Positions 1 to 49,939 of a stretch of DNA of 64,000 nucleotides are shown here, piece after piece. The notes beneath the pieces were generated by a model that saw nothing but the letters and a program-made list of their open reading frames with translations, was not told the DNA's origin and did not search any database. Within the stretch, counting starts at the first letter, position 1; each line of letters starts with the position of its first letter. A program made the translations under genes and the position numbers. Source of the DNA: Macrostomum lignano (taxonomy: Eukaryota); contig NIVC01001162.1 of the NCBI GenBank assembly GCA_002269645.1, positions 1 through 64,000 on the forward strand, given 5' to 3'.

Positions 1-1349
1 CATTCCCCAGGACACCAATCCACTGTCAGGATGAGAGCCAGAGACACTTAGGCAGGGAGACAACCAGAGGAGCCAGCAGATGGACCAAGGACAGAGCAGG
101 ATGGACCGGGCAGGGAGGGCAGAGCTCATAACTCCGAAGAATTGGAGGCAACTATGGCCAGATAAAAACAGGGTATAAAAGCGCGCTGGGATGCCAGCCC
201 AGAAAAAAAGACTCATCCCGTGGATGGAAGAGAAGGGGGTCCTGGCAGCAACCAGTGTGCATACCGCGCCTATCACGGGGCCCCGGACAATGTTTTCCGA
301 CTAGTTCAAGATGTCAAAGAAGAGAGACACAGAAACTATAAACACTTGGGTCTATTCCTAGATGTTGAGGCAGCCTTCGACTCAGTCAGGCATGACATGC
401 TCAGACACAGGACCACAGAAATACAAATGCACGTACCCTAGTCAGAATTACATCCAGCTACATGCATGACAGAAGGATCATAGTAAAGGTGGGCGAGAGC
501 CTGGGTGAGGTCTTCGTCCCCAGGCAGGGGTCCCCCAGGGCGGGGTCCTCAACCCACTCCTCTTTAACCTCTATGTTAGCACGATGCCCAAACCTCGGGT
601 CCCTGCGTCCAGACTAGTCAATATGCGGATGATATGGCCATTTGGGCCAGGTCTATTAGCCCCAAGTATGCCGCAGGGCATCTCCAAAAATACATAGAAA
701 ACCTTCAACCCTGGCTGGGGAAGTACGGCATCAAAGTTAATGCCAAAAAGAGTCAGGCAGTCAAATTCTACGACAATCGGTGCAAATCCGGACCTCGACA
801 CGACCCCCAGCCCTTAAACTCGATGGGGAAGAGATTCCCTACACAGACTCCGTTACATTCCAGCTTGGGGTCACCTTGGACAGAAACCTCAGCCTTAACC
901 AACACGTCAAAAGATACACAATAAATGCGAGGTCAGAACCTTCCAGATCAGGAGGATTGCCCGACTAACCAAGGTCCCAGCAGAACCTTCAGACTCCTGC
1001 ACAGAGCTTACATTGAGAGTGCATGACCTACGCCCCCCAAGTTCTCCTGTCCATGGGAAGCACCAACTTTACCAAACTCCAGCATATCCAAAACACCAAC
1101 CTCAGACTCTGCTACAATGCCCCCAAATTCACCAGAATCAACTATCTGCACAAAATAGCTAACATACCCATGGTTAAGCCCAGGGTAGAAAAGGTAGCCA
1201 CCAAATGGTACCAAAAAGTTATAGCTAACGCCATCCACGGATTCGAAATCCCCCCTCCAAAGCAAGCCTGGAGAAACCATAAGCTCCCAGATCCCCCATT
1301 AGACACATTAGTCAAACTCACCGAGCTGATGGAGAAGGCTGCAGGATAG
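1..1349 (+). mobile_element. Non-LTR retrotransposon (Jockey/I-like) reverse transcriptase remnant, frameshifted, 5' end outside the window
   Basis: RT motifs split across frames: LFLDVEAAFDS (220-441), GVPQGGVLNPLLF (about 525-565), QYADDMAIW (about 617-643), LGVTLDRNL (780-968) and a C-terminal ORF at 1023-1349. No restriction-like endonuclease motif is visible at the C-terminus. Confidence 0.85.
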
Positions 1350-2125
1350 TAGATCTCGCCGCCAAAACCATGTAAATCTAGTCCATGCAGCTCTCTATTA
1401 TCTAGTCCTTGCTGCTTTTTATTTTTACTCATCTAGTCGATGCTGCTTTTACAGTGCCTTTCTATTGCCAACTGGCTAACGCTCTTCTAACTGCGACAAT
1501 TTACACCCTATTATTCTATAAATGCGCGTCCTCTTGTGTAAGGGAGGAAGGCTCATAATTCCGCCTGGGCACTGCTGGGACTAGGGTCCGGGCTGGCCAA
1601 TTATGGCCACAGGATTGTCTACTCCCCAGTCTAATTAGATCCGCAACCTGAGCGAATCACCCCACCCTGCAGATGCCCTATTTTTTTACTTTGTGATGCC
1701 TTCTTTGTGAGCCTTCCTCCCATACGGTATTTCTGCACATCTTTTTTAGTTTTAGCTTCATGCACCAGTTTTACTCATCTTTTATATATTTGTTTTACTT
1801 TATTAACTTATACTTTCATTGCATCTACTCAATTTAATTTACTTTTTCAATTAATGTAATCTCTATTGACTTATGCTCTCCATTTTAAATGCTCTACATT
1901 TATTGCACCTTAATTTTACTACTGTATTCTTGCACCTGTTTTACTACCCTGCAGTACCAATGCAGTCTAAGTCTAACCTCAGTCTTTTACACCGCCAAAT
2001 TACTATTTTAAATAAACAGGCGCAAGAGCCAATTTTAAAACGGCTGACGCGTGGCCCGGAAGCTGTCTGCTTGACACTCCCGTGGCAAACTTATTAACGA
2101 ATTCCACTCTATTATTAACGAATTT

Positions 2126-2238
2126 GCCGTTTTGACGGTCTCTTACTGCGAAGACTCAATATTTTGCATGGTAAGACACCGCGTGGATCCAATTGAGCGA
2201 TCTACTCAATTTTTGACAAGCCGCGCTTCCGCGGCTGC
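2126..2238 (+). ncRNA. Spliced-leader (SL) RNA gene, copy 1; 45-nt exon 2126-2170 ending in ATG
   Basis: Sequence GCCGTTTTGACGGTCTCTTACTGCGAAGACTCAATATTTTGCATG|GTAAG has a 5' stem-loop (GCCGT/ACGGT), the flatworm-type terminal ATG followed by a GT donor, an Sm site AATTTTTGA (2208-2216) and a 3' hairpin AGCCGCG-CTTC-CGCGGCT. Confidence 0.9.
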
Positions 2239-2640
2239 CTAACAAAGCCTAAATTAATTGATTATTAATAATTATCCGTGTGTACAATAAATACGAGTAA
2301 TGATTATTCATTCGCCCTCGAGTCGCACCAGCAGCATCAAGAGACACATAATACAGCGAGCGCATCGCGGTGTGCAGTACACAGTGCAGGCTCGATCTCT
2401 TGGATCGATTTGCCATAATGAAATGTATTTTTTAGATCAATTGCTCTTCTATGACTATATACGAGTACATGTACAATTGTACAACTTTTTTATGGGATGG
2501 CGCTAATTAAAATTAAAAAGTCGAACTGCACTGCACTTGCGTTGAGCTAGCTATTGGTTGATAATGTCAATCACCACCAACTGTTGCTCGTATATATGAG
2601 ACGAGACGCCCCGTAATTAAGCGTACTACCTATTAGGTAT

Positions 2641-2889
2641 CAGTGGTGGCGCGGGGGGGCAGAGGGTGCTGCTGCCCCCGGGCGACCTCCTACCTACCCT
2701 CCTGGGGGTTGGTGACTTACATGTACCTCCCATCCCTCCGTGGTCTGACCCACAATAATTTCTTTAGTACGAGCTCGTTATATGCGTTTTTGTGAGATTT
2801 TATGCGATGCTCTAAAAATTCGCCGGCGAAGGGGGGTGACCACCCAACAACCACCCCCTCTAATCGGAGTTGGTGCTGCGCCGCCACTA
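2641..2889. mobile_element. Possible hAT-like MITE in the SL-5S spacer
   Basis: Ends CAGTGGTGGCGC and GCGCCGCCACTA form imperfect inverted repeats. No TSD was found. Confidence 0.35.
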
Positions 2890-2949
2890 ATGTTATTATG
2901 TATAGCTGCAGGTTCAGGTTAATTATGAGCTAAGCTCCTATTAGCCAGT

Positions 2950-3068
2950 GGCAACGGCCATACCACGTTGAAAACACCGGTTCTCGTCTGATCACCGAAG
3001 TTAAGCAACGTTGGGTTTGGTTAGTACTTGGATGGGTGACCGCCTGGGAATACCAAATGCTGTTGTCT
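2950..3068 (+). rRNA. 5S rRNA gene
   Basis: 119 nt, GGCAACGGCCATACCACG...GATCACCGAAGTTAAGC...GTACTTGGATGGGTGACCGCCTGGGAATACC...GTTGTCT. Helix I pairs (GGCAAC/GTTGTC) and boxes A and C are present. Confidence 0.97.
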
Positions 3069-3073
3069 TTTTT
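3068..3073 (+). terminator. Pol III oligo-T terminator of the 5S gene
   Basis: T6 run at the 3' end of the 5S sequence. Confidence 0.75.
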
Positions 3074-3575
3074 GCCTCTTTAACTGCCGCGCGCTCATTA
3101 AAACACTAATTCCATGCAGCTGCTGCACGCATTAATACACTACTATATGCTCCCTTCGGCTTCGACTCGGTCTCGATCACGGAGAAATTCGCGATTCCCC
3201 GTGGTGCTTTATAATTTTCTATGCGCACTTTCCACGCGGTGACGCGATGCACTTCAGTAGTTTTTCGATCGTATCTCTCTAACACGGCAACTATAGTTTT
3301 ATTTAATTTATATTAATATATTAATCAATTAGTTAGGCGGCGCATAATTTGTACACACTGTCTAAACATGTCGTCGGCTAAAAGAAACGAAAGGCAGAGC
3401 TGCACATGCACTTTCTGGCGCGTCTTTTCAAGCTGCAGTGCACAAGAATGCTGCACTATAGTCGGCATAACTTACTTGGAGTAGATGAAATTCAACATAA
3501 TCATTTGCCCTAGGGCTCGCGGCTCAAGCGCAGAGCTGTGCACTGTTGGAGAGCGTTTTCCATTCCACTCTCTTT

Positions 3576-3688
3576 GCCGTTTTGACGGTCTCTTACTGCG
3601 AAGACTCAATATTTTGCATGGTAAGACACCGCGTGGATCCAATTGAGCGATCTACTCAATTTTTGACAAGCCGCACTTTCGCGGCTGC
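3576..3688 (+). ncRNA. SL RNA gene, copy 2; exon 3576-3620; native upstream flank retained
   Basis: Exon, GT donor and Sm site are identical to copy 1. The 3' hairpin is AGCCGC-ACTTTC-GCGGCT. Confidence 0.9.
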
Positions 3689-4199
3689 CTAACAAAGCCT
3701 AAATTAATTGATTATTAATAATTATCCGTGTGTACAATAAATAATGATTATTCATTCGCCCTCGAGTCGCACCAGCAGCATCAAGAGACACATAATACAG
3801 CGAGCGCATCGCGGTGTGCAGTACACAGTGCAGGCTCGATCTCTTGGATCGATTTGCCATAATGAAATGTATTTTTTAGATCATTGCTCTTCTATGACTA
3901 TATACGAGTACATGTACAATTGTACAACTTTTTTATGGGATGGCGCTAGTTAAAATTAAAAAGTCGAACTGCACTGCACTTGCGTTGAGCTAGCTATTGG
4001 TTGATAATGTCAATCACCACCAATGGTAGCTGTCAATGGTAGCTGATTTATAGCCGACCGCGTCGCTAATCTTATAATTACGAACAGAGCAGAGTTTCAA
4101 AGTGAGCAGCGTGACTAACAACCCTATGGACAATGCTTGGTGCTGAGGCATGAGAATCCGTTGATAAATGGGCCATAAAGAAGTTTCAGAGTCCCCAGT

Positions 4200-4420
4200 T
4201 TTCAGCAATTAGAGATCGTGAAGGCGGTCTGTATCTGAGGTTGTTTATGGGTGCACTAATCCTGGAGGGCTGTGGTGCGACCTGGGGCCGCCTGGCCGAC
4301 CATCTTGCATCGCTGCTTTGAGCTGCCATTGCGCTAGGCGAAGCTACATGCGAAAGGAGCTGGTAAATGGACCACCTGGTCAGCCCTTGTGCCCCAGAAG
4401 TACTGGTAGTTAGATCTCTG
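4200..4420 (+). mobile_element. Putative LINE (RTE-like) 5'-UTR remnant; related sequence at about 6425-6480
   Basis: GGAGCTGGTAAATGGACCACCTGGTC...GCCCCAGAAG recurs as GGAGCTGGTAAAGGGACCACCTGGTC...GCCCCAGAAG near 6430. The family assignment is an inference. Confidence 0.35.
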
Positions 4421-4714
4421 AGGAGATCGGAGCAGGTGCACTAAGCGGCTTGGTGATGCCAGGCCTTTGGCAAATAATAAAGAGCTTCGCAGTGAGGACC
4501 CCAAACCTCTCGCCTTTGAAGACCCACCCCTATTCTCGTTGGTAGGGCCCTTGACTAGGCTGATCCGCGCCTTACGGCACCCCGTTTAACAACAATTAGA
4601 AACCCCTACCGATAAGTGCACCAAAGCCAGTGGGCATGCAAACTGACAACGAAACAATAACGCAGAAACATTGACTACTAGCAAGCTATGAATAATAACG
4701 AATTGCCGCCAGTG

Positions 4715-5116
4715 TCAGTACACATGCACCATTCCGTATAGGAAAGTCCAGAACGTGATGTAGGTGATGAGCTCGCCCATAACGCCGGAGGAGGCCAGAG
4801 CCCAGGCCGAGGGAAAATACCGCCACCTGGCCCGGCCCGCCTTGGCGAGCAGCAGGCAGGACAGGTAGCCGCTCGCCAGCATGTAGAATGCGAAGCCCAG
4901 CAGACCGGTCAGGCCCAGAATGCCGGCCGTGCAGCCCGACACTGCGGCCAGGGCTGTGCGGCAGTACGTTAGCAGGAAGGCGTTGTGCTGCAGGGCTGCG
5001 CCATTCAGAGCGGAACCGGGACTGCCCTGGTGCGGCCCGGCTGGGGTGCCACCCTGATGACCTGCACGCTTCGCTGCCTCCGCGCTCGGGGGCGAGTACG
5101 TGCCAGATGGGTCCAT
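4715..5116 (-). CDS. EMC6: ER membrane protein complex subunit 6, single coding exon, 133 aa
   Basis: [38 protein letters not shown]...[20 protein letters not shown] is the characteristic EMC6/TMEM93 sequence, including its C-terminus. Confidence 0.95.
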
Positions 5117-5149
5117 TGCTGCGGGTCAGTGAGGGCTTGCGTGACCCTG

Positions 5150-5665
5150 CAATCACCTCAACCTGCTCCTAACTCACCCACCTCAACCTGCTCCAAACTC
5201 ACCCCTGCACCACCTCACCCTGCACCCACCTCACCTGCTCCCACCTCACCCCTGCATCCACCTCACCCCTGCCTGCACCCACCTCACCCTGCTCTAAACT
5301 CACCTCACCCCTGCACCCACCTCATCCCTGCATCCACCTCACCCTGCTCCTAACTCACCCCTGCTCTCATTTCACCAATAAACCCACCTCACCCCTGCTC
5401 CCATTTCCCTAATGAACCCATCTCACCCTGCTCCTAACTCACCCCTGCACCCACCTCATCCCTGCATCCACCTCACCCTGCTCCTAACTCACCCCTGCTC
5501 TCACTTCACCAATAAACCCACCTCACCCCTGCTCCCATTTCCCTAATGAACCCATCTCACCCTGCTCCTAACTCACCCCTGCACCCACCTCAACCTGCTC
5601 CAAACTCACCCCTGCTCCCAACTCACCCTGCTCCTAACTCACCCCTGCACCCACCTCACCCTTAG
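5150..5665. repeat. C-rich degenerate minisatellite (CTCACCC units) with a higher-order repeat of about 120 bp
   Basis: Visible tandem CTCACCC(C)TG(C/T) units. Confidence 0.9.
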
Positions 5666-6051
5666 AGCAACCTGCACACAGCTAAAACAGCATATTTATT
5701 AACGTGAAATCGAAGGGAAGAAAGAAATATAAATGAAAGACAAGTTCAGCGTAGCAGTTGAAATAGAAAACTAGTTATTATTGTCTCAGCAAATCTGTAT
5801 AAGTTTCATACAGAGAAATGATCACAGTTTAACCATGTGACAAGATATAATCCAACAATATTCCAATTCTAATCGCTGATAAAAGCATGCTAATATTATA
5901 TGCGAATAAACGCAAGTAATGCAATCAGCACTAAAAGCGTGTGTGCTAGTAAATAATCTAGTAATGTATGTAGAGATATCCGGAATAGAAACATAAACTC
6001 TGGAATCTCGAGTAAGTACTTCATCGCAGCACAATATGGAATGCTGATAAT

Positions 6052-9000
6052 TCAATACTGTCCGTCCTCCTGCCGCTCAGCTCGAGACAGCCGGCTGTGC
6101 AGATCCAGCGGGATCACAAAGCAGGAAATGTCGTCAACTGACGCCTGCTCGCCGTCTGGGAGTCGCCAGCTGCCGCCGCCCCCGCCACCGGGTCGCTCCG
6201 GCTTCTGCCAGGCGCCTCGTGCAGCTCCGACCAGCTCTTGGGCGACAATGGTCAGGCTGGAATAGATGCGCTCTGGCTGTAAACAATTGTAAACAGAAAA
6301 CCTCAACTGGCTACTCGAAGAATGGGGCTAGTAGTAAGAATAGAATAAATAGAATAAGTCGCTTGCACACCCAAACACAATTATTAAGTCTGTGTGAGCG
6401 TGTGCCTGCTCACCTACCCGTGCAGGGAGCTGGTAAAGGGACCACCTGGTCTGGCTTCGCGCCCCAGAAGCTGGTACCCTGCAGTGTGACCCACTGGAAA
6501 CAAACGGGATTCCCTGTGCCGGAGCGGATCGGCTGAAGAGAGAGGGGCCGTCTAGGAGATTATACTCACAACTTACTCTTGGCATCCAATGAGTTATTAC
6601 TCTAGGGGAGTAGCGAACAATTAATTGGTCTAATTCTAGGCTTTTGGTGACAGCCTATCAACCAGAGCTCTTGTAGTGACTGGCTGCTAACTGGCTTTTC
6701 AGCAGCATTCACTAGCTTTCCTTAAGAGCTCTGTGTTCCGCTGCACAGCAGCTCAGTCCACCTGACCTAGAGAGAGAGTTACCCTGTGCTGGGCCTGAGT
6801 GTTTACTTCCCGATGACTCATCGCCCGAGCAGGCGTGGGCAGCCACACACAATGTCTTCCCACCCGCGCTGAGGAGGCATAGCAGGATGACTTATCACCT
6901 GCCCTGAGTGTAATGGCTGTCTAGAGGGAGTAAACAGGATGACTCATCCGCCCAAATCTATTTTTAGCACAGAAAAGCACGTGACTGCACGCTAGTTGTG
7001 CGTGGCAGCTGACCTTGAGTCACGCCACGGCGGCGTGACAGGGTTACCTTATTTGGAAGTTGGCCTTGAGTCACGCATCTCTTGCATGACTCGAGGCTCA
7101 AATAAGGAAGTTTCACGCGCTCAACCCCTTGAGACTCACGACTTTTGGGGGTCCGATCGGCTATAAATACAGAGCATCTGGGAGCCGTTTTTCCCCAGAC
7201 CTTGCATCCTTGCCGCCGCGCTTGGGCCTCGTCCGGAGCTGCTTCTCTGCCTCCGAGCACTCATCTCTCATTTCAGGATTTCAGGTTTTTCAGGTTCTAG
7301 CAGCTATTTTAGAAACGATCAAACTGTCGAGACATTTTCAGATTTGCCTTGCTCCAAGCGACTTCGTTATTTTATTTCAGGTTACGGACGCGTCGAGTCC
7401 GCAAACCAAGGTGGCAGCAACCCTACCAAGTCTAAGGCTAACGTTTTAGGTTTTCACAGGCAAATCGATAGGTAGTACAACGGTACTATCTAGCTACTTC
7501 CGGAGCATCGAGTTCAAATTTAGGTACATCATCAAGAACTCGGGAAGCAGCGCAACACTCTGAACATATCTCATAAGCCTAGGATCCTCGAATTCCAGGT
7601 GGGTCTTACTGGCAGGATACCAGCTTCTGAGGCATGATGCCTTCCAGGTGGTCCCGATTAACACCAGCTTATGAGGCATGATGCCTTCCAGGTGGTCTAT
7701 TTATTGGCTCCCTTCGCTGGTAGCCTCACCTAGCGCAGAGGCAGCTCAAGTATCACCTTTACGATGTCACCTGCTGGACTGCAAGGACACGCATACACCC
7801 CCAAGACGGTCAGTGCAGCAACGATCTCAAATCCCAGGAAATTCGTTTGACACTATGTTGCTTCCACAAAAAATGTTATTTTAAACCTTATTTTAAAAGA
7901 CTGACCAGGGCCCCAGACCGCACAGCGGCCGCCTCACCTATTAGCCGCAGTTGCGGCTTCTCGGGCTTGATTCAGGCAGCTCTGCACCGTCTTGGCGACC
8001 GCCTCGCAACTGATCACGTCCCATAGACCATCTGTTGCCATGACAAGCACATCTTCGCAGCCGTCTTGCTCAGCAGTCTGTACAACTGTCACCTGAGGCA
8101 CGCAGCTCAGAAAAGGTTTCAACTGAATTGGCGAGTCGAACACGCGCAGGTCGTGATCGCCGAAGCCGCGGGCGACGCCTATTGTGGCCAGCAGGCGGGA
8201 CTGCAGCGTGGTGGCGGGTGGCAACTGTTAGAGCCAGGCTTTTGCGCTTGCAGATTAGTTGGGGCGATTGTAGGATTTCCGAATTCGGGTGCTCGCACAG
8301 AGGCAAGTTAATAGGGCAGTTATTACGCGTTTTGCGCGAGACAACTCAATGGCGAAAATTTCATTATTTAAAGCGATATTCAAACAATCTTTTTGAAGCG
8401 AGCACAATCAATCATTCTTCAACTTTCTATTTACTCGCCTTTTTCTCGTCCCCAACAATGAGCGGAAACAGCAGATCCTCTTCAGTCACAGTTTTGTAAT
8501 GCCTGCCAATGATGATTATGTTCGAGCAGTTTGTGAATGGCGATTCTCAAGGGTGAATAACGATTCTTGAGGGTGAATGGCGATTCTTGAGGGTGAATGG
8601 CGGTTCTTGAGGGTGAATGGCGATTCTCGAGGGTGCATAGCGATTTTTGAGGGTGAATGGCGATTTTCGAGGGTGAATGGCGGTTCTTGAGGGTGAATGC
8701 CGATTCTCGAGGGTGCATGGCGATTCTCGAGGGTGCATGGCGATTCTCGAGGGTGCATGGCGGTTCTTGAGGGTGAATGGCGATTCTCGAGGGTGCATAG
8801 CGATTTTCGAGGGTGAATGGCGGTTCTTGAGGGTGAATGCCGATTCTCGAGGGTGCATGGCGATTCTCGAGGGTGAATGGCGGTTCTTGAGGGTGAATGG
8901 CGATTCTCGAGGGTGCATAGCGATTTTCGAGGGTGAATGGCGGTTCTTGAGGGTGAATGCCGATTCTCGAGGGTGCATGGCGATTCTCGAGGGTGAATGG

Positions 9001-9431
9001 CGGTTCTTGAGGGTGAATGGCGATTCTCGAGGGTGCATAGCGATTTTTGAGGGTGAATGGCGATTTTCGAGGGTGAATGGCGGTTCTTGAGGGTGAATGG
9101 CGATTCTCGAGGGTGCATGGCGATTCTTGAGGGTGAATGGAGATTCTCGGGTGTGAAGGCCGATTTATGAGGGTAAGCAGAGAAAACAAGTGTCTGACAC
9201 GACCCAAGCGCTGCTCCAGCTCACCATCCCTGCATGCAACCGTGTCTGCACAGAACCCGTTCACCCAAGTCCCGCCTGCCCAGTCGGCGAGCGAACTGCA
9301 GAGCGCAGAACTCCTTGTGCAACAGCTCCGGGTGGTGGCTGGCGATCAGCTGCAGCCGTTCCCGGTCGTTGTAGGGCGTCAGGTCCACCGACAGCGGCTG
9401 CGCCGACCCGGTGCGCTGGCACAGGACCGCT
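6052..9431 (-). CDS. PPM1H: PPM1H/PPM1J-like PP2C phosphatase, 3' half only; exons 9431-9225, 8502-8439, 8200-7938 and about 6276-6052
   Basis: RAVLC...DLTPYNDRERLQ...EFCALQFARR...GW|HYKTVTEEDLLFPLIVGDEKK|SRLLATIGVARGFGDHDL...VLVMATDGLWDV...DDISCFVIPL. The first three exons join in phase. The last junction does not reconcile (phase 2 donor, phase 0 acceptor), so a microexon or an indel is possible. Confidence 0.88.
6814..7169 (+). promoter_or_regulatory. AP-1 motif cluster plus TATA box (LTR-like promoter) inside the PPM1H intron
   Basis: Exact TGA(C/G)TCA at 6814, 6940, 7016 and 7067; TATAAATA at 7162. Confidence 0.4.
8520..9140. repeat. 20-bp minisatellite (GAGGGTGAATGGCGATTCTC), about 31 copies, intronic
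   Basis: Period of 20 read directly from the sequence. Confidence 0.97.
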
Positions 9432-9793
9432 CTGGGACAAGTGCGAATTCGGGTGGCTATGAGCTGCTGCGGCTCAGTACAGGCTGGGGAAGAATGGGAA
9501 CCCGCTGGGACGCAACTCAGATTTTCGCCCGACGGTCGACCGACACGAAACAACACGATTTATCTACGATTTTCATCTTCGTCCGACTCCCAACGATAAA
9601 AAAACGGAGGAAAAACAATTCGAAAAAATAACCCGACATTAGCCCTATTTTGTCGATTCGATCCCTCAAAATCGAACCGAATTCGTCGCTGACTCGCCGA
9701 TTTTCGTCGCAAACCGTAACGACAACTCAGACTTTCGCTCGAAATAACTCCGACATTCATCCGTCACTTTACTTGTAGATAAAAAACGAACCG

Positions 9794-10760
9794 TTTTCAA
9801 CGATTCTCATCGACAGCGATCGGTTCGACTTTAAGCCTATTTTTTCCCGATTTGGTAGGGTCGATTTTCAACGATTCTCATCGACAGCGATCTGTTCAAC
9901 TTTAAGCCTATTTTTTCCCGATTTGGTAGGGTCGATTTTCAACGATTCTCATCGACAGCAATCGGTTCGACTTTAAGCCTATATTTTCCCGATTTGGTAG
10001 GGTCGATTTTCAACGATTCTCATCGACAGCGATCTGTTCAACTTTAAGCCTATTTTTTCCCGATTTGGTAGGGTCGATTTTCAACGATTCTCATCGACAG
10101 CGATCTGTTCAACTTTAAGCCTATTTTTTCCCGATTTGGTAGGGTCGATTTTCAACGATTCTCATCGACAGCGATCTGTTCAACTTTAAGCCTATTTTTT
10201 CCCGATTTGGTAGGGTCGATTTTCAACGATTCTCATCGACAGCGATCGGTTCGACTTTAAGCCTATTTTTTCCCGATTTGGTAGGGTCGATTTTCAACGA
10301 TTCTCATCGACAGCGATCTGTTCAACTTTAAGCCTATTTTTTCCCGATTTGGTAGGGTCGATTTTCAACGATTCTCATCGACAGCAATCGGTTCGACTTT
10401 AAGCCTATATTTTCCCGATTTGGTAGGGTCAATTTTCAACGATTCTCATCGACAGCGATCTGTTCAACTTTAAGCCTATTTTTTCCCGATTTGGTAGGGT
10501 CGATTTTCAACGATTCTCATCGACAGCGATCTGTTCAACTTTAAGCCTATTTTTTCCCGATTTGGTAGGGTCGATTTTCAACGATTCTCATCGACAGCGA
10601 TCGGTTCGACTTTAAGCCTATTTTTTCCCGATTTGGTAGGGTCAATTTTCAACGATTCTCATCGACAGCGATCTGTTCAACTTTAAGCCTATTTTTTCCC
10701 GATTTGGTAGGGTCAATTTTCAACGATTCTCATCGACAGCGATCGGTTCGACTTTAAGCC
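9794..10760. repeat. 71-bp tandem repeat, about 13.5 copies
   Basis: TTTTCAACGATTCTCATCGACAGC... recurs at 9794, 9865, 9936 and onward. Confidence 0.97.
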
Positions 10761-12549
10761 TTAAACTTTATTTCTCTGGAATCCATAGAAACGCACTGGA
10801 AGCCGCACTCAGTTACGCGCTCAATTTCTTATCTCAAGTATGCAGTATATTAAACTGTCTCCATGGACAGTAGAGTACCATTTGCAAATGGTAGAGTATA
10901 TTATTTTATATGTTTATTTATACGAGTTACATTACGATACAATTGGCAACCGCTAACGTGGCACATAAGTGCTAATCATGAGAGTTGAATCATGTCTCTG
11001 GTCTTAGTATCTAATCTTATCGCTAGTCTATACTCCTTGATCTCACCTTGCCATTCTGAATTCATTGGTCCTATATATCCAATTTTATATTTTGTCTCTA
11101 ATCTGTAGTCTAAATGTATGTAATCCTTTAATCTAATATAATCTAATAGCTGCCAGGCAGCTCAGGCTTGAGTACGATTTTTCTAGCACCTGATTTCTAC
11201 GAAAGCACCCCATCGACATGGACTTTTTGTTGCAATCTTTTTTCAGTTTTAACATTTTTAGCCAACTGCTATGGTTGGTAACCATGATAAAAATTTGGCT
11301 CGTAAATAAATAACTCAATATAGTGAATTTGCATGCAGCACTTAGCATGAAGCCTCAGATTTATTTATGTAAATATCATTTGTACTACTCTTTATGCACT
11401 GCGGCAAATTTGCACAGATATGAGATGCATGTATTTTTCAGCAAGTACTGATACGCAAGGCTTCAATCAAAGTCTGACAATTCTGAAATCTTGTCAAATT
11501 AAGCCGAACCTCTAAATACATGTACAGATACAAGTCTGATACAAACAGAAGAGAGAAGAGATCAGATAGGAGAGATGAAAGAGGAGAAAGGAGAGATGAG
11601 AAAGCAGAGACGAGAAATGAGACAGTAGAGCTAGAACAGAGGAGAGAAGAGAGGGAAGAGATTATAGAGACGAGTGGAGAGAGAAGAGAAATATGTGAGA
11701 GCAGACATGAGAGACAATGGGATAAAAATGGAGTGAAGGAGAAAGGAGAATAAAGGGGGAGAATCCAGAGGACAGGAAGAGAGGGGAAGGGAGAGAAGAG
11801 AGATGAGAGGAAAAAGAAGAATGGAGAAGGGAAAGAGTAGAAAGGAGAAGAGAGATGGGAGAGCAGGAGAGATGAGAGGGAGGAGAGAGTAGAGAGGGGA
11901 GGTGAAAGAGTAAAGGGGAGAAAGTTGAGAGAAGAGTTGGGAGAGTTGGGAAAAAAGAAGAGAGATGTTAAAGGAGAGTACAGATGAGAGATGAGAGAGA
12001 GGAGATAAGACAAGAAATAAATAATAGGAGAGAGGGTCGAGATAATAGAGGAGAGAGAATTGAGAATTTCGCACTGACCTACAAGGTGCGAACAAACACG
12101 AGAAATCAAACTGAAATGTGCTAATTTTAACAGTCCTAGACTTCCATTGTTCCTACAAAATTTTAAACAGCGAGGCAGGACCTACTGCGGGGCAGACCCA
12201 TAGAATTTTTTCCGGTTTCCAAGATAATATTGACTTATAGGGAATAAACACATACCGTACGAGCTCAAATTTGAGCTCAAAGTTCGAGCTCAAATCCTAA
12301 ATATTTAAACATCGCCACATGAGCACAGAGTCACAACATAGTTTGAATATGATGGAAAGCGCACGTAAATAAGCGAAAAGCGGTATCCAACGGGGCAACA
12401 CAAGCAATCTTTCAATACGCTAATTGGGAAGGGATTAAGCAATCACGGGCTAACTTCCATTCTGCCACTCAGCGGGGGTCGAATGGGAGACTAACTCCTA
12501 ATAAATAAATTTTCTCAGTCCTATAATCTTTAATGGCATGACACGGCCT

Positions 12550-16385: not shown

Positions 16386-19300
16386 ATGGCTAACTTTGAT
16401 GGATTCTTGAGGACACAGTTGTCATCAGTAAGTGCTTAATTATTGGTATATAATTTATTAAATTATCAATCATTCTATTGATTAATTTAGTGAGTTGGTG
16501 CCTAGACCCTAATGGTCCTAACCTTAACCTATAAAGGCTATCCTAGACCTAGGGTGCCATTTTGTCAAGACTATATTACTGTTAGTCTCATAGTATGCTA
16601 TGCCATATGTAGTCAAAATTATCATATTCAAAATTGTCATATAATGATGATGACTTGACCAAATCTGTATGACCTAAGCATTTATAAATTCGATGACTTC
16701 AACCAAATGCAAAGGCAAGGCCAAGGACATATTATTGTTATTATTATTACAAAATATTTATTACAATATTAAATTGTATTTGTTATTTATTGCAAAATAA
16801 ATTTAGAATTTTTAAACTTTGAAACAAAACTTTTAATAGTAGCATAGCTCTGTATCTGTTTGAAATTATATGAAAATCATCTCTTGAGATCATATAACTA
16901 AACTATTATACATTATATAGAGTATACTAATGCAATGTATATGTATAACTAAGAAACATTTGGATTGCCTTGGCCAAAAGACTTATTTAATTTGATTCTT
17001 TTTTATTTATTTATATATGATTTTGATGACTCATTTAATACTAAATAGTAGTATAAATAAGTCTTAAAGTTAGATCATTTTATTGGCAAACAATGTTGCT
17101 ATAAGCTAAGATCATTGTGTAGCCAATACAATACAACATGACAATTTAATGAATATAGCATTATCTAAAACTGAGGTATATATAATTTAATATATCTTTG
17201 GCTAATCAGTTTTTTGACATTAAACCAACATTAAAATGTATATATAGGAAAGAAGTGGCTGTATACTAGATGACAAATAAAATGGGATGGCTGGCCAAGG
17301 TGTAAGGAATAAGTGAGTCATGATGCTAAATCATGTCATTTGCTTAATTTTTTTATTTATATTAACTTAGCTATATACATTTAAACATTGGTTTAACTTT
17401 GATAACTTTGGTCAAAGTTATTTATATACTAAGACAATGACAAGTTAGATACTTTAGTTGTTTTTATTTTATGCTATATATAACAATCTCAAATAGGACA
17501 AATTAAGGTGGAACCCTATGTTATTCCTAGAATAAAACTATGCACATGTTCCCCTATTAGAATAAATGTAGAAAACCTATTGACACACAACACAGGGTCT
17601 AAAATTGTAGTTTAAAAATGTGACAACACAGAACACGTTAACTGAATACATGCATAGTACTAATTAGATAATGAGGCATTTAGCCTTAATAAGACAATCA
17701 TAGTTACTCTTGCCACTTACCCAAAAACTATACCATGCCGCAACACCACCTGCCTTAATTCTAGCCGCAATGTGACACTAGAAAATTTCAAAATCATGAT
17801 AGTCAAACACATTTTGTCCACTTATTCCAATAGGGACATGTTCTTGGAATAGCATATAAGTCATACATGCGCAACAGTCGGCCGAGTCGGCCGATCGGGC
17901 CGACCGATTTGGCGGCCAACCAAGGAAGTCGCAAAAATGCCCACCCGAAAAAACACCAAGTAGTAGTACTAAGTAGCTGACGAGGCATTTTGGCTTTATA
18001 AGACTGTTATAGTTACTCCTGCCGTTTACCCAAAGTTGCGTTAATTTTGCTTTCGGGTTTTTTACATGTAAGTCGCATTTTTGGCCAAAAACTACGTCGC
18101 ATTTTTGTTAAAACTAAGTCGCACGGCCGACCAAATTTTGGAGGTTGCGCATGTATGATATAAGTGGTACACTAGCTAAAATAGTCTTAACTCTATGCTG
18201 GCATAAATTAAAAAAATTATACCAAGCATAAAGTTGTTTATTTGCCAACTTTTTTTAAAGAATATATTTTAAAAAAACTTAGTTTTACTAAATTTAATAT
18301 GTCAATTTTTTGCTAGAAATTATTATTCTATTTTACTTATGTTTTCCTCATTAGTTGCATTATTATTATTTTCATTTTTTGTTTCCAATTACTTTAAAAG
18401 AGCTTTCCCTGTTGATATTTAACTACTCTAAATACACTAAGCCTAGACTTGGCTATTATTTGTATATCAACTGTGTATACTAATTTTAAACTTTTAATAA
18501 TTCTACATGCCAAGATTATTAATCAATGTTCTATTTCTACTTTTTCTATTCAACTAAAGCAGCCTATTATCTTTACCTGATCATGCTAATGTAAACTTTT
18601 GTTCCAATTTTTATCTATGAAAATTTGGGTTTTCGATTGGCTATTTGGTACCCAGTATATCCTAGTGAAAGTTTGCAAAGCTTTGGAAGTTGATTGAAAG
18701 TTGGCATAGCATGCTGTAACTGTAGCTATGCTGAATGATGGAGCACTAATGCTCGGCTTCATCCAACGCAGTCATTGGCTAAGCGCACAATTACAAACCC
18801 GCGCCCCCGGCTCGCAGAACTATAAGCACCCGGAGCCAGCCAGGCGCGACTTGGCCAATGCTCTGCACGAATACCGCGACCTCCGGCCGACAACCGAGTC
18901 CTTCACCTTCTCCAACGGCGAGACCCGCCAGCTGCTGGCCCTCAGCGGCACCATCCCCGTGGTGCACAAGGGCAGCACCTACAACATACCCGTGTGCCTG
19001 TACATGCAGTACAACGCCCCATACGATGCGCCATTGGTGTACGTCAGGCCAACAGCCTCCATGGAGATTCGCGTCAGCCAATACGTAGATAGCAACGGCC
19101 GGATTTACATGCCCTACCTGAGCTCCTGGACTCATCCGCAATCTGATTTAGTTGGATTAATCCAGATGCTGCAGATACAGTTTGGCGACACTCCACCCGT
19201 TGTGTCCCGGATGGCGCGCCAGGCCGCCCCGGTGACCCCCATGGCTCAGCAGCAGCACCAGCAGCCGGTTTCAGCGGCCGGAGGCGGCTATGGCTGGGGC

Positions 19301-21654
19301 GCCGGCTACGGTTGGCAGCAGCCGCCTCTGCCGCCGCAGCAGCAGCAGCAACAGCAGCCGCAGTCAACTGGAACAAGGCAGGATTATCAGGAGGAAGCCA
19401 TGAGGATGTCCGTGCTAACGGCTGCCGAGGATAAGGTGGATATTTGAATCATTTTGAGACTGTTCTCCCAGATCCCCATATGCAATTAGCAAGATGTTAT
19501 CCCAGTATTCCCCCAGATCCCCATATGCCATCGGCAAGATTTTATCCCAGTATCCCCCCAGATCCCCATATGCAATGGGCGAGATTTATCCCAGTATTCC
19601 CCCAGATCCCCATATGCAATGGGCGAGATTTATCCCAGTATTCCCCCAGATCCCCATATGCAATGGGCGAGATTTATCCCAGTATTCCCCCAGATCCGCA
19701 TATGCAATGGGCGAGATTTATCCCAGTATTCCCCCAGATCCGCATATGCAATGGGCGAGATTTATCCCAGTATTCCCCCAGATCCCTATATGCAATGGGC
19801 GAGATTTATCCCAGTATTCCCCCAGATCCGCATATGCAATGGGCGAGATTTATCCCAGTATTCCCCCAGATCCGCATATGCAATGGGCGAGATTTATCCC
19901 AGTATTCCCGCAGATCCCTATATGCAATGAGCAAGATTAGATCCCCTTAGATTAGATCCCCTTTAGATTCCCTATAATAAATTTCCATAGATCCCCATAT
20001 GCAATCAACAAAGCACTAGCGGTACAGTGAACAGCTGTCTTCAGGTGTCAATTCGCACATCTCGAATCGCCGATTCCAATCGTAGGTTCGCCGTCGCTAC
20101 AGCGAGAAACGAGCCCAGCTAGAAGCCGAGCTCGACGTTGTTCGTCGCACCGGGCAGGATCTGCGAGAAGGTCGGGAGAAGCTGGAAAAGCTGTTGAGGG
20201 GCCTGGAGACGGAGCTGCAATCGGTGGGAGACTACACCACCCGCCTGCGCCAGGCCAACAGCCAGGCCGAGGAGATGCTCACCCAGATGGCCGCTCAGGA
20301 GTCCGTCGGAGTTGACGAAGCGATCGACGCCACGGCGCCGCTCTACAGGCAGATTGTTCGCTGCTACGCCGAGGAGCAGGCGCTGGAGGACACGATCTTC
20401 GCACTGGGCGACGCGCTGCGCAAAGGCTGCGTTGATATCGACTCGTACTTAAAGGCAAGCCGCCGCCGTTCCTGTCCCGCCCTTCCAATGAGGGTTGGAA
20501 GTTGGAAGCAAGATCACTGAAGGGTCTGAGGGTTTCACCAGCGGGCCCTGATAGATTAGATGGAAGGGGTAGAAGCGGGCTCTACAAGATCATAGGGTCC
20601 CTGAAAGATAGGAGGGTTGGGATTGAAGCTGGTGCCTGGGGGATAGGAGGGTTGGGATTGAAGCTGGTGCCTGAAGGATAAGGAGGGTTGGGATTGAAGT
20701 CGGTGCCTGGGGGATAGGAGGGTTGGGATTTTTAAGCCGGTGCCTGGGGGATAGGAGGGTTGGGATTGAAGCTGGTGCCTGAAGGATAAGGAGGGTTGGG
20801 ATTGAAGTCGGTGCCTGGGGGATAGGAGGGTTGGGATTGAAGCCGGTGCCTGGGGGATAGGAGGGTTGGGATTGAAGCTGGTGCCTGAAGGATAAGGAGG
20901 GTTGGGATTGAAGTCGGTGCCTGGGGGATAGGAGGGTTGGGATTTTTAAGCCGGTGCCTGGGGGATAGGAGGGTTGGGATTGAAGCTGGTGCCTGAAGGA
21001 TAAGGAGGGTTGGGATTGAAGTCGGTGCCTGGGGGATAGGAGGGTTGGGATTGAAGCCGGTGCCTGGGGGATAGGAGGGTTGGGATTGAAGCTGGTGCCT
21101 GAGGGATAGGAGGGTTGGGATTGAAGCCGGTGCCTGGGGGATAGGAGGGTTGGGATTGAAGCTGGTGCCTGAGGGATAGGAGGGTTGGGATTGAAGCTGG
21201 TGCCTGAGGGATAGGAGGGTTGGGATTGAAGCTGGTGCCTGAGGGATAGGAGGGTTGGGATTGAAGCTGGTGCCTGAGGGATAAGGAGGGTTGGGATTGA
21301 AGCTGGTGCCTGAGGGATAGGAGGGTTGGGATTGAAGCTGGTGCCTGAGGGATAGGAGGGTTGGGATTGAAGCTGGTGCCTGAAGGATAAGGAGGGTTGG
21401 GATTGAAGCCGGTGCCTGGGGGATAGGAGGGTTGGGATTGAAAGATAGGAGGGCGGGCTTGAAGGATAGGAGGGCGGTGGCCAGTCGTTTCTGAACGGGC
21501 AGCAATAGCAATTCAGTAGCAACCAGCAGCTGCTAATTACCCTGATGTCGCCAACCCGACATTGCAGACGATTCGCGAGTTGAGCAGGCGCCAATTTCTT
21601 CTGCGAGCAACTGTACAGATGGGCCGGCAGAAGGCCGGCTTGCCAGATATGTGA
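16386..21654 (+). CDS. TSG101: TSG101/Vps23 (ESCRT-I); exons 16386-16427, 18818-19435, 20086-20454 and 21568-21654
   Basis: MANFDGFLRTQLSS|NYKHPE...GTIPVVHKGSTYNIPVC (UEV domain), Pro/Gln-rich linker, coiled coil, and Steadiness box PLYRQIVRCYAEEQALEDTIFAL...DSYLK|TIRELSRRQFLLRA. All junctions are phase 0. Confidence 0.95.
17862..18157. mobile_element. MITE with 14-bp TIR CATACATGCGCAAC and 8-bp TSD ATATAAGT
   Basis: Perfect TIRs and an exact 8-bp duplication. It is the same family as 28035-28312. Confidence 0.9.
19468..19928. repeat. 44-bp minisatellite, about 10 copies, TSG101 intron 2
   Basis: GATCCCCATATGCAATGGGCGAGATTTATCCCAGTATTCCCCCA units. Confidence 0.97.
20605..21450. repeat. 35-36-bp G-rich minisatellite, about 23 copies, TSG101 intron 3
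   Basis: GATAGGAGGGTTGGGATTGAAGCTGGTGCCTGGGG units. Confidence 0.97.
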
Positions 21655-49019: not shown

Positions 49020-49935
49020 GTTCCTCGATGGCTCTTTGCTGAGTCATCGAGGAAGCGCGGACCCGCCAGTCGAGCCTGATTGCTCTCTTTATTGACTCCA
49101 GGAAGGCTTTCGACTCGGTCGTGAGGGCCGTGCTCCCAATGGTGCTTCGTGCGTACAACGTGCCAGAGCAGCTGATTTTCGCTGTCATGGCGCTGTAATG
49201 GCACGAGCGCTGCTGTGCTAACACCGGACGGCCTGTCGGATCTCTTTGAGACATCCTCTCATGGGGTGCTTCTGGGAGATACGCTTGCGCCGTTCCTGTT
49301 TGTTCTGGTGCTTGACTGGGTGCTGCGGACTGCTCTCCCTTCTAACGACGACGGCTTCCTGTTGAAGCGACGCATGGGTCGACGCCAACCGGAGAGGCGG
49401 CTCAGCGTGCTTGGCTACGACGACGATCTCGCCCTGTTGTCCTCGACCGTCGAGGGCGCCCAACGCCAGCTGGACTCGCTGGTAAGTGTTGCGACGAGCG
49501 TCGGCCTGGTGGTCAATGCAACGCGCAGAAGACCGTCGTGCTCTGCGTGCCGGACGACATCGATGCTGCAATTTTCTGCCGAGGCGCTGAAGGGCAGGTG
49601 ACGAAGCTTCCGTGCTGTCAGCAGTTCGTCTACCTCGACAGTCTGTGGTGCCTAACGTTCGCGAGGACCTGTGACGTCGCCCTGGACTTGCCCGGGCTTG
49701 CCTGGGCGTTCCGTGAGGGCTGTCAGCTGTAGTCCGAGGCCATGCCCGACCGCCAGAGGACCTGTTCCAGGCGGTGATCGACCGTCCTGGTGTACAACCG
49801 AAACCTGGACGCTGAAGGATTCACTCGAACAGCTGGTCGATGCAGCGCACGCTGGCCTGCTGCGCGCCGCCTTCAAGATCGGCTACGAGCACGTCTACAA
49901 TGCGGCACTCTATCGCCGCGCCGGCCTGTCCCGTC
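49020..49935 (+). mobile_element. RTE-clade-like reverse transcriptase remnant with stops and frameshifts
   Basis: LFIDSRKAFDSV; GVLLGDTLAPFLFVLVLDWVLR; LGYDDDLALL; GLVVN. Confidence 0.85.
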
Positions 49936-49939
49936 CCAG

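What the first reader, a model, noticed from the sequence alone, without database searches (positions are those of the whole stretch)
2126..3688. SL RNA genes physically linked to 5S rRNA in one repeat unit in a flatworm-type genome
Seen: SL-5S-SL, all on the + strand, with a period of about 1.45 kb. Known: SL-5S linkage occurs in nematodes such as C. elegans and in some euglenozoans; I am not aware of it being described in Macrostomum. Inference: this is a co-repeated Pol II (SL) / Pol III (5S) unit under concerted evolution, here as a short dispersed cassette rather than a long array.
Basis: partly seen in the sequence, partly recalled or inferred. Interest (0 to 1): 0.85.

Follow-up and report, generated by a model that had tools for sequence, protein, structure and literature searches.

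The report
Variant spliced-leader genes beside a 5S gene
In a Macrostomum lignano-type flatworm genome, one intact 5S rRNA gene sits between two nearly identical copies of a spliced-leader-like RNA gene, but these copies are a diverged relative of the known leader gene and the locus holds only 1.3 repeat units, so it is a modest new example of a linkage known in other animals.

Summary
A full-length 5S rRNA gene lies at 2950-3068 (+). Two SL-RNA-like genes lie at 2126-2236 and 3576-3686 (+), exactly 1450 bp apart.

- The window is M. lignano or a very close relative: its twinfilin exon is 199/200 aa identical.
- The two SL-like genes are not the canonical M. lignano SL RNA gene. The leader differs at 5 of 44 positions and the intron half is only about 60% identical. 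The architecture is kept: three hairpins, a GUAAG donor and an Sm site.
- Only 458 bp are duplicated, starting at the SL 5' end. There is one 5S and no other copy in the 64 kb, so this is 1.3 units, not an array.
- Two canonical SL RNA genes recovered from environmental Macrostomum-type contigs have no 5S nearby. One follows a U1 snRNA gene.
- Published FISH work implies a 5S array unit of about 1.65 kb in M. lignano, long enough to hold an extra gene. Its content is not reported.

No paper in the library links SL and 5S in Macrostomum or in any flatworm. Genome-wide co-repetition, concerted evolution and expression of the variant leader could not be tested here.

Verdict: a new member of a known kind, of moderate interest.

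The parts
2126..2236 (+). SL-like RNA gene, copy a. Leader is about 2126-2170, ending in ATG. GTAAG donor at 2171-2175. Stem II at 2183-2205. Sm site AATTTTTGA at 2208-2216. Stem III at 2219-2236.
   Evidence: Exact 40-nt leader plus donor match. Three-hairpin fold, -36.8 kcal/mol, z=-3.41. Alignment to canonical SL RNA genes.
3576..3686 (+). SL-like RNA gene, copy b. Identical to copy a except 3675 A (G in copy a) and 3679 T (C in copy a), both in stem-loop III. Leader about 3576-3620, donor at 3621-3625, Sm site at 3658-3666.
2950..3068 (+). Full-length 5S rRNA gene. Its last base overlaps the T6 run at 3068-3073, which is a Pol III terminator.
   Evidence: Rfam RF00001, 116.5 bits. Exact matches to the M. 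lignano 5S primers 5SF (2975-2995) and 5SR (reverse complement of 2953-2971) from PMC5704211, and to the conserved box-C-region primer TACTTGGATGGGTGACCGCC (3026-3045) from PMC4664967. Sequence.
2123..2580 (+). Duplicated block, first copy: SL-like gene plus 344 bp of downstream spacer.
   Evidence: blastn 2123-2580 against 3573-4023: 97.8% over 458 columns. Repeat families D6-D8. Differences listed.
3573..4023 (+). Duplicated block, second copy. It carries a 6-bp and a 1-bp deletion relative to the first copy.
2581..2949 (+). Single-copy spacer between the duplicated block and the 5S. It contains a G+C-rich segment of about 245 nt (2642-2887) closed by a 13-15-bp long-range inverted repeat.
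   Evidence: (MFE -105.9 kcal/mol, z=-2.84).
3069..3572 (+). Single-copy spacer between the 5S and SL copy b. It forms the whole upstream region of copy b and is shared with copy a only over ATTCCACTCT (3562-3571 = 2101-2110).
2092..2125 (+). Left junction of the cassette. TTATTAACGAAT occurs twice (2092-2103 and 2113-2124), flanking the island TCCACTCT.
   Evidence: Read directly from the sequence.
4021..4046 (+). Right junction of the cassette. CAATGGTAGCTG occurs twice in tandem, exactly where homology to copy a ends.
   Evidence: Read directly from the sequence.

Best explanation
Positions 2123-4023 hold 1.3 copies of a 1450-bp composite unit in a Macrostomum lignano-type genome. The order is SL-like small RNA gene, 713 bp, intact 5S rRNA gene, 507 bp, second SL-like gene, all on the + strand.

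Shown:
- The 5S is a standard full-length gene with a T-run terminator.
- The SL-like genes have every sequence hallmark of a flatworm SL RNA. The leader is about 45 nt and ends in AUG. A GUAAG donor is paired back onto the leader in stem I. Stem II, a single-stranded Sm site AAUUUUUGA and stem III follow.
- They are nevertheless a diverged paralogue of the canonical M. lignano SL RNA gene, with a conserved 5' half and a rebuilt 3' half.

Inferred:
- An SL RNA gene copy was once captured in a 5S rDNA spacer, as has happened repeatedly in other SL-using lineages.
- The composite unit was then duplicated by unequal exchange or slippage.
- This locus is a small orphon, or the remnant of a contracted array, lying between a decayed LINE and a PP2C gene.
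- The two gene types are transcribed independently: 5S by Pol III from its internal control region, and the SL-like gene by an snRNA-type Pol II promoter that I could not identify.
- The linkage is a by-product of array dynamics, not a functional coupling.
- The conserved leader and donor block suggests the paralogue was functional for much of its history. Whether it is expressed or trans-spliced now is unknown.
For: - 5S identity and integrity.
- SL hallmarks and fold.
- Same architecture in the canonical genes L005:615-723 and L006:1589-1697.
- Paralogue status: published leader CCGTAAAGACGGTCTCTTACTGCGAAGACTCAATTTATTGCATG against CCGTTTTGACGG...CAATATTTTGCATG in the window. The first 54 nt are 49/54 identical and the rest about 60% (Fisher p about 1e-4). 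The five leader differences fall in predicted loops or unpaired positions.
- Species: the twinfilin exon is 199/200 aa identical to M. lignano A0A1I8GR49.
- Extent of the duplication and the differences between copies. The substitutions and the 6-bp indel argue against an assembler-made duplicate.
- Only one cassette in 64 kb.
- Flanks are unique sequence: a frameshifted non-LTR reverse transcriptase relic at 1-1350 and a PP2C exon at 7937-8224 on the - strand.
- M. lignano has a FISH-visible 5S cluster. The outward-facing 5S primers yield 1645 bp, giving a unit of about 1.65 kb. The authors allow for undetected residual copies elsewhere.
Against: - This is a single locus. No genome assembly, long reads or RNA-seq of the species could be searched.
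- The window's period (1450 bp) does not equal the published 5S unit (about 1648 bp), so descent from the main array is unproven.
- The two SL copies share no upstream sequence beyond 10 bp, so at most one has the native promoter context. No promoter motif could be defined, even among the canonical genes.
- The variant leader was seen on no transcript and in no paper.
- 2 of the 3 substitutions between the copies fall in the SL gene's stem-loop III. One of them breaks a base pair. This gives no sign of current constraint.
Confidence: 0.6

Rival explanations
1. The cassette is a faithful sample of the main M. lignano 5S rDNA array. Every unit of about 1.5-1.65 kb would then carry this SL-like gene, so the genome would hold many copies of a second, functional SL RNA class co-amplified with 5S, as with SL1 and 5S in C. 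elegans.
For: The published 5S unit is about 1.65 kb, which is unusually long for a 119-bp gene and leaves room for a second gene. The window 5S matches both array primers exactly. The SL-like gene keeps the leader, donor, Sm site and hairpins despite an old divergence. Reviews say SL genes often sit in 5S repeats.
Against: The period here is 1450 bp, not about 1648. M. lignano studies report a single leader. Those studies used a k-mer consensus and 100%-match BLAST, which would miss a minor variant. A gene present in every unit of a 5S array, if expressed, should have left a visible second leader. The variant leader is absent from the four Macrostomum-type contigs found.
Confidence: 0.25
2. 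This is a dead relic: the SL-like genes are pseudogenes and the 5S is an inactive orphon. Nothing here is transcribed, and the locus is debris from a lost or contracted array, for example the 5S cluster reported as lost from chromosome MLI1 after the whole-genome duplication.
For: The 5S cluster is reported lost from MLI1, with residual copies not excluded. There are only 1.3 units, with micro-duplications at both junctions. There is a pair-breaking substitution in stem III of copy b, and no excess conservation of the gene over the flank. Copy a has lost the upstream spacer. The neighbourhood is a decayed LINE and satellites.
Against: The 5S is flawless against the Rfam model and keeps its terminator. 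Both SL-like copies keep donor, Sm site and all hairpins. The leader block is far better conserved than the rest relative to the canonical genes, which uniform pseudogene decay would not give.
Confidence: 0.3
3. This is a chance juxtaposition plus a local duplication. A dispersed SL-like gene happened to lie near a dispersed 5S copy, and a 458-bp segment was copied 1 kb downstream. There is no composite repeat family.
For: Only the SL-bearing 458 bp is duplicated, and the 5S is single. Canonical SL genes are dispersed next to unrelated genes, U1 snRNA or Na/K-ATPase beta. M. lignano SL RNA genes are few, at 8 in the deduplicated assembly.
Against: Two rare small-RNA gene types, all on the same strand within 1.6 kb, is the pattern recurrently produced by 5S-array capture in other phyla. 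The duplicate lies exactly one unit length away, as in a tandem array.
Confidence: 0.2
4. This is an assembly artefact: a long tandem array collapsed to 1.3 units, or a chimeric join.
For: Tandem arrays of units of about 1.5 kb are commonly collapsed. The M. lignano genome is highly repetitive.
Against: Both flanks are unique sequence on the same contig. The copies differ by substitutions and a 6-bp indel. The junctions are clean. Read-level data could not be examined.
Confidence: 0.12

Closest known systems
C. elegans 5S rDNA / SL1 cluster: a repeat unit of about 1 kb carrying one 5S gene and one SL1 RNA gene (Krause and Hirsh 1987; abstracts of PMC11822377 and bioRxiv 10.64898/2026.01.07.698080 seen)
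   Same: A Pol III 5S gene and a Pol II SL RNA gene lie within one short unit. The SL RNA has a donor site and an Sm site.
   Different: In C. elegans the unit is repeated about 100 times, carries the major leader, and the two genes are on opposite strands (from my own knowledge). Here there are 1.3 units, the genes are on the same strand, and the leader is a variant of unknown use.
SL-5S clusters in copepods, Oikopleura, dinoflagellates, Euglena and some trypanosomatids (PMC4664967, PMC3795323, PMC7346339; the taxon list is partly from my own knowledge)
   Same: The SL RNA gene is embedded in or adjacent to 5S rDNA. In copepods and dinoflagellates this coexists with SL-only arrangements.
   Different: None of these is a flatworm. 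Array-scale repetition was shown experimentally there and was not shown here.
Canonical Macrostomum lignano SL RNA gene: 109 bp, 8 copies in the deduplicated Mlig_3_7 assembly (Ustyantsev and Berezikov 2021, PMC8629364). Examples recovered here are L005:615-723 and L006:1589-1697.
   Same: The leader core GACGGTCTCTTACTGCGAAGACTCAAT, the ...TTGCATG/GTAAGACAC donor block, the GATCCAAT motif in stem II and the three-hairpin plus Sm layout are all shared.
   Different: There are 5 leader substitutions: loop AAA to TTT, and TTTATT to ATATTT. The Sm site is AAUUUUUGA against AUUUUUAG. Stem II has a different 3' strand and stem III is unrelated (GCCGCG... against AGCCC...). Length is 111 against 109 nt. 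The canonical examples have no 5S within 0.6-2.4 kb.
Schistosoma mansoni SL RNA tandem repeat: 595-bp unit (Rajkovic et al. 1990, via PMC2770079). Cestode and trematode SL clusters (PMC12582326).
   Same: These are flatworm SL RNA genes in same-strand clusters, with a leader ending in AUG.
   Different: Those units contain no 5S, and the schistosome SL RNA has two hairpins. 5S is not mentioned at all in the 2025 survey of parasitic flatworms.
M. lignano 5S rDNA cluster at the end of MLI2p: 1645-bp inter-primer product (Zadesenets et al. 2017 and 2020; PMC5704211, PMC7013459)
   Same: Both primer sites match the window's 5S exactly. The spacer is long, more than 1.3 kb.
   Different: The unit length is about 1648 bp against a 1450-bp period here. 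That cluster is a FISH-visible array and its spacer content is unpublished. The window holds a single 5S.

Membership tests
5S rRNA (Rfam RF00001) | Scores above the family's gathering threshold over the full model, with the three-way-junction structure | tested here: met
   116.5 bits against a gathering score of 38. Model positions 1-120 of 120 are matched and no non-canonical pair is flagged.
5S rRNA (Rfam RF00001) | Pol III gene features: a conserved internal box-C region and a T-run terminator | tested here: met
   TACTTGGATGGGTGACCGCC at 3026-3045 equals a pan-arthropod 5S primer. T6 run at 3068-3073.
5S rRNA (Rfam RF00001) | Transcribed and incorporated into ribosomes | not testable with these tools
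   No expression data were available.
Flatworm spliced-leader RNA | The 5' leader is identical to the sequence found trans-spliced on mRNAs of the species | tested here: not met
   The leader is 39/44 identical to the published M. lignano leader. The mRNA-type contigs L003 and L004 carry the canonical leader, not the variant. The variant string occurs in no paper. No RNA-seq of the species was searchable, so use as a minor leader is not excluded.
Flatworm spliced-leader RNA | A GU splice donor directly after a leader that ends in AUG, with the donor base-paired to the leader in stem I | tested here: met
   ...GCATG|GTAAG at 2166-2175 and 3616-3625. Stem I is in the MFE and centroid folds.
Flatworm spliced-leader RNA | A single-stranded Sm-binding site (RAU3-6GR) between two 3' hairpins | tested here: met
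   AAUUUUUGA at 2208-2216 and 3658-3666 is unpaired between stems II and III. The layout is the same in the canonical genes.
Flatworm spliced-leader RNA | An snRNA-type upstream promoter | tested here: inconclusive
   No motif is shared among the upstream regions of the two window copies, the two canonical SL genes and a U1 gene. The copies share only ATTCCACTCT.
SL-5S composite tandem array (C. elegans type) | One SL RNA gene and one 5S gene per unit | tested here: met
   SL at 2126-2236, 5S at 2950-3068 and the next SL at 3576-3686.
SL-5S composite tandem array (C. elegans type) | The unit is iterated head-to-tail many times | tested here: not met
   The window holds 1.3 units and a single 5S, with no other copy in 64 kb. 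Whether an array exists elsewhere in the genome could not be tested.
SL-5S composite tandem array (C. elegans type) | The species' main SL RNA genes reside in the 5S units | tested here: not met
   The canonical SL RNA genes in L005 and L006 have no 5S within 0.6-2.4 kb, even at E<=1. L006 has a U1 snRNA gene instead. The sample is only two contigs of uncertain species.
SL-5S composite tandem array (C. elegans type) | Concerted evolution: copies within a genome are more alike than orthologues between species | not testable with these tools
   This needs many copies and at least two species. The two copies here are 97.8% identical, which a recent duplication also explains.

The most novel reading that the evidence does not exclude
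Macrostomum lignano has a second, unrecognised class of SL RNA, with leader ...CCGUUUUGACGGUCUCUUACUGCGAAGACUCAAUAUUUUGCAUG. Its genes reside in the spacer of the 5S rDNA repeat, including the main array of about 1.65-kb units on MLI2, and it is trans-spliced to a subset of mRNAs. This would be the first SL-5S composite repeat in Platyhelminthes and the first evidence of SL diversification in a macrostomid. The canonical SL genes would be dispersed or U1-linked and the variant 5S-linked.
Probability: 0.2. Interest if true: 0.6.

Novelty: new member of a known kind. Interest (0 to 1): 0.4.

Why it matters
SL RNA genes have been captured by 5S rDNA repeats independently in nematodes, tunicates, crustaceans, dinoflagellates and euglenozoans. 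A flatworm case would add another independent instance. M. lignano is transgenic-tractable, so it would allow study of how Pol II and Pol III genes coexist in one short unit, a question now being studied in C. elegans.

The paralogue itself may matter more. M. lignano is described as having a single leader. Pipelines that trim or map only the canonical 35-mer would miss transcripts carrying a variant leader, which would affect operon and gene-boundary annotation.

The cassette could also mark residual 5S rDNA left after post-duplication cluster loss, which bears on rediploidisation in this hidden tetraploid.

If the genes are silent relics, the finding is only a small annotation note.

Tried and rejected
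- Recovering other copies of the unit through ORFs. Exact look-ups of four unit ORFs, a homology search with the SL-spanning ORF and a chimeric query of all 39 six-frame segments of the unit all returned nothing. The protein collection evidently holds no gene calls from such repeats.
- The M. lignano twinfilin protein is not on record in the contig collection. No M. lignano genomic contig could be fetched, so no homeologous locus could be compared.
- Twinfilin transcripts of two congeners (L001, L002) carry no leader at their 5' ends, so they say nothing about leader variants.
- Scans of viral contigs for the SL core and for the 5S found nothing.
- Rfam has no matching SL family. The only other sub-threshold hits in 1-8000 are chance-level, with E above 2.
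- A search for a shared promoter motif upstream of the SL and U1 genes found nothing beyond chance. I therefore dropped the idea that copy a is demonstrably promoter-less.
- I considered that the upstream LINE might be an SL- or 5S-specific retrotransposon of the NeSL or Mutsu type. It is frameshifted, its ORF ends about 750 bp before the SL gene, its 5' end is outside the window, and no second copy exists in the window. There is no support, so I dropped the idea.
- I considered a species difference as the explanation for the variant leader. I rejected it because four independent Macrostomum-type contigs of differing base composition all carry the identical canonical 44-nt leader, while the window's protein is 99.5% identical to M. 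lignano.
- A covariance model of the SL RNA was not built. MAFFT could not align the 3' hairpins consistently with structure. An nhmmer profile was used instead.
Full report
**1. What is in the sequence**

The Rfam scan of the whole window gives a single hit above threshold. It is a complete 5S rRNA gene at 2950-3068 on the + strand: 116.5 bits against a gathering score of 38, E=5e-25, all 120 model positions matched and no irregular pairs. A run of six T follows at 3068-3073.

The string CGGTCTCTTACTGCGAAGACTCAATATTTTGCATGGTAAG occurs exactly twice, at 2136-2175 and 3586-3625, both on the + strand. None of 100 shuffles gave any match. The spacing is exactly 1450 bp.

Each occurrence lies in a 111-nt segment (2126-2236 and 3576-3686) that folds into three hairpins.
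- In stem I the leader pairs with the GUAAG donor.
- Stem II follows.
- An unpaired AAUUUUUGA comes next, which fits the Sm consensus.
- A G+C-rich stem III closes the molecule (z=-3.4 and -3.2).

**2. Extent of the repeat**

Self-comparison shows that only 458 bp are duplicated: 2123-2580 equals 3573-4023 at 97.8% identity. The block starts three bases before the SL 5' end and runs 344 bp past the gene.

The 984 bp between the blocks, which include the 5S, are single-copy. The regions upstream of the two SL copies share only ATTCCACTCT. The locus is therefore 1.3 units of a 1450-bp period, not an array.

The copies differ by three substitutions, a 6-bp indel and a 1-bp indel.
- Two substitutions lie in stem-loop III of the SL gene (2225 G/A and 2229 C/T). 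One of them opens a base pair.
- That is 2 differences in 111 nt of gene against 1 substitution and 2 indels in 347 nt of flank.
- So there is no sign that the gene is better preserved than its flank. The data show a recent duplication and nothing about concerted evolution.
- The differences also argue against an assembler-made duplicate.

Both junctions carry small tandem duplications: TTATTAACGAAT twice at 2092-2124, and CAATGGTAGCTG twice at 4021-4046. A profile search and a blastn search found no further SL-like or 5S sequence in the 64 kb.

**3. Whose genome**

The exon at 57286-57942 is 199/200 aa identical to Macrostomum lignano twinfilin A0A1I8GR49. The next-best hits, at 88% and 76%, are from other sequencing runs. 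The 5S matches exactly the two M. lignano 5S primers published by Zadesenets et al.. The window is M. lignano or something extremely close to it.

**4. The SL-like genes are not the known SL RNA gene**

The published M. lignano leader is CCGTAAAGACGGTCTCTTACTGCGAAGACTCAATTTATTGCATG. The window has CCGTTTTGACGG...CAATATTTTGCATG, which is five differences in 44 positions.

A scan of public collections with the shared leader core recovered four contigs.
- L003 and L004 carry the canonical leader at a contig end, joined to coding sequence. They are trans-spliced mRNAs.
- L005 and L006 carry complete canonical SL RNA genes in genomic context. These fold into the same three-hairpin plus Sm layout and are 109 nt long, the length reported by Ustyantsev and Berezikov.

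Against these canonical genes, the first 54 nt of the window genes (leader plus donor block) are 49/54 identical. The remainder is about 60% identical, with indels (Fisher p about 1e-4). End gaps slightly inflate that difference.
- The Sm site is AAUUUUUGA instead of AUUUUUAG.
- Stem II keeps GAUCC but pairs it with a different 3' strand.
- Stem III is unrelated.
- The five leader changes lie in predicted loops or unpaired positions.

The four outside contigs differ greatly in base composition but share the identical 44-nt leader, so the canonical leader is conserved across Macrostomum-type species. The window genes are thus an old paralogue, not a species variant. Their 5' half has been constrained, or gene-converted, while the 3' half was rebuilt with the architecture kept. 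That pattern is not what uniform pseudogene decay produces, but it says nothing about present activity. The variant leader string appears in no paper of the library.

**5. Is SL-5S linkage general in this lineage?**

L005 has 614 bp upstream and 2.35 kb downstream of its SL gene. L006 has 1.59 kb upstream and 2.05 kb downstream. Neither contains a 5S, even at E<=1.
- In L006 a U1 snRNA gene (151.7 bits) lies 305 bp upstream of the SL gene on the same strand.
- In L005 an intronless Na/K-ATPase beta gene lies about 1 kb downstream.

The only canonical SL genes I could examine are therefore not in a unit like the window's. The sample is two contigs of unknown species.

On the other side, cytogenetic papers show a single FISH-visible 5S cluster at the end of M. 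lignano chromosome MLI2.
- It was amplified with outward-facing primers as a 1645-bp product. From the primer positions I derive a unit of about 1648 bp.
- The cluster is absent from the paralogous region of MLI1, with residual copies not excluded.
- A 1.5-kb spacer has room for another gene, but its content is not described.
- Neither paper mentions spliced leaders.
- The window's 1450-bp period does not equal that unit.

The genome paper mentions neither 5S nor SL RNA genes. The SL paper reports eight 109-bp genes in the deduplicated assembly without describing their neighbours.

**6. Surroundings**

- To the left lies a frameshifted non-LTR reverse transcriptase relic (1-1350), with recognisable GVPQGGVLNPLLFNLY and YADDMAIWA motifs split across frames, followed by AT-rich sequence.
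- To the right lie C-rich minisatellites (5143-5673), a PP2C exon on the - strand (7937-8224) and two large satellite arrays.
- No inverted repeats bracket the cassette, and neither flank recurs in the window.
- Nothing suggests a mobile element carrying the cassette.

**7. Mechanism**

Shown: an intact 5S gene, two structurally complete SL-like genes, a 1.3-unit layout and paralogue status.

Inferred:
- An SL RNA gene copy was captured in a 5S rDNA spacer. This is the recurrent route by which small multicopy genes join 5S repeats in other phyla. Reviews call SL-5S proximity common.
- The composite unit was duplicated by unequal exchange.
- The locus is an orphon or a contracted remnant.
- Transcription is presumably independent: Pol III on the 5S internal control region, and an snRNA-type Pol II promoter for the SL-like gene. 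I could not define any promoter motif, even between the canonical genes.
- A functional coupling of the two genes is not indicated.

**8. Rivals**

- (a) The cassette samples the main 5S array, and the variant is a second functional SL (0.25).
- (b) Everything here is a silent relic (0.3). This is compatible with the structural account and differs from it only on activity.
- (c) Chance juxtaposition plus a local 458-bp duplication (0.2).
- (d) Assembly collapse or chimera (0.12).

The tests that separate these are listed under next steps. All need the species' assembly, long reads or RNA-seq, and none of these was reachable here.

**9. Comparison and novelty**

The closest analogue is the C. 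elegans 5S/SL1 repeat. Similar clusters are reported in copepods and, by review, in many SL-using organisms. Among flatworms, schistosome SL genes sit in a 595-bp repeat without 5S. The 2025 survey of SL clusters in parasitic flatworms never mentions 5S. No paper in the library links the two in any flatworm.

The locus is thus a new member of a known kind.

Interest is moderate at 0.4. It would rise to about 0.6 if the variant proves to be expressed and array-resident.

Noticed in passing
L006 1121-1697 (JAGQZA010000190.1, deposited as a Flavobacteriaceae MAG): A U1 snRNA gene (Rfam, 151.7 bits) lies 305 bp upstream of a canonical Macrostomum SL RNA gene on the same strand. The contig also has TTAGGG-like repeats at about 270-340. 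It is almost certainly flatworm DNA contaminating a bacterial MAG, and it shows a U1-SL linkage.
   Followed up: partly
L005 601-723 and 1774-2922 (Ga0302322_100095745): A canonical SL RNA gene is preceded by a partial duplicate of its own 5' end (GCCGTAAA at 601-608 and 615-622). About 1 kb downstream lies an intronless Na/K-ATPase beta-chain gene (Pfam PF00287, E=1e-49).
   Followed up: partly
window 2642-2887: A G+C-rich segment of about 245 nt in the SL-to-5S spacer is closed by a long-range inverted repeat (CAGTGGTGGCGCG ... GCGCCGCCACTA). It also contains a local hairpin at 2650-2684. The fold has z=-2.84. It could be a small foldback or MITE-like insertion, or an unknown structured RNA.
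   Followed up: partly
window 2092-2125 and 4021-4046: Both ends of the cassette carry 12-bp tandem micro-duplications: TTATTAACGAAT twice and CAATGGTAGCTG twice. This is suggestive of template-switch or end-joining repair at the junctions.
   Followed up: no
window 1-1350 (+): A decayed non-LTR retrotransposon reverse transcriptase, with its motifs spread over all three frames by frameshifts. It is cut by the window start.
   Followed up: partly
window 5143-5673, 8433-9272 and 9652-10874: Three tandem-repeat arrays: C-rich 17/33/50-bp units, a 20-bp unit in about 40 copies, and a very homogeneous 71-bp satellite (96-100% identity). Many long ORFs across the window are translations of such repeats.
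   Followed up: no
window 7937-8224 (-), 18728-19444 (+), 25506-27396 (-), 37779-38342 (+), 39485-40147 (+), 57286-57942 (+): Exons of ordinary host genes: PP2C phosphatase, a UEV-domain (TSG101-like) protein, a G3BP-like protein with NTF2 and RRM domains, a D-2-hydroxyacid dehydrogenase, a C2H2 zinc-finger protein and twinfilin.
   Followed up: partly
window 49840-50766 (+): An RNase H and zf-RVT segment of another retroelement in a G+C-rich region. Overlapping antisense ORFs there are artefacts of base composition.
   Followed up: no
L003 1344-1380 (-) and L004 1-40 (+) (Ga0316592 contigs): Contigs from an environmental data set start with the exact M. lignano leader joined to coding sequence. 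Macrostomum-type trans-spliced mRNAs are therefore present in that sample.
   Followed up: no
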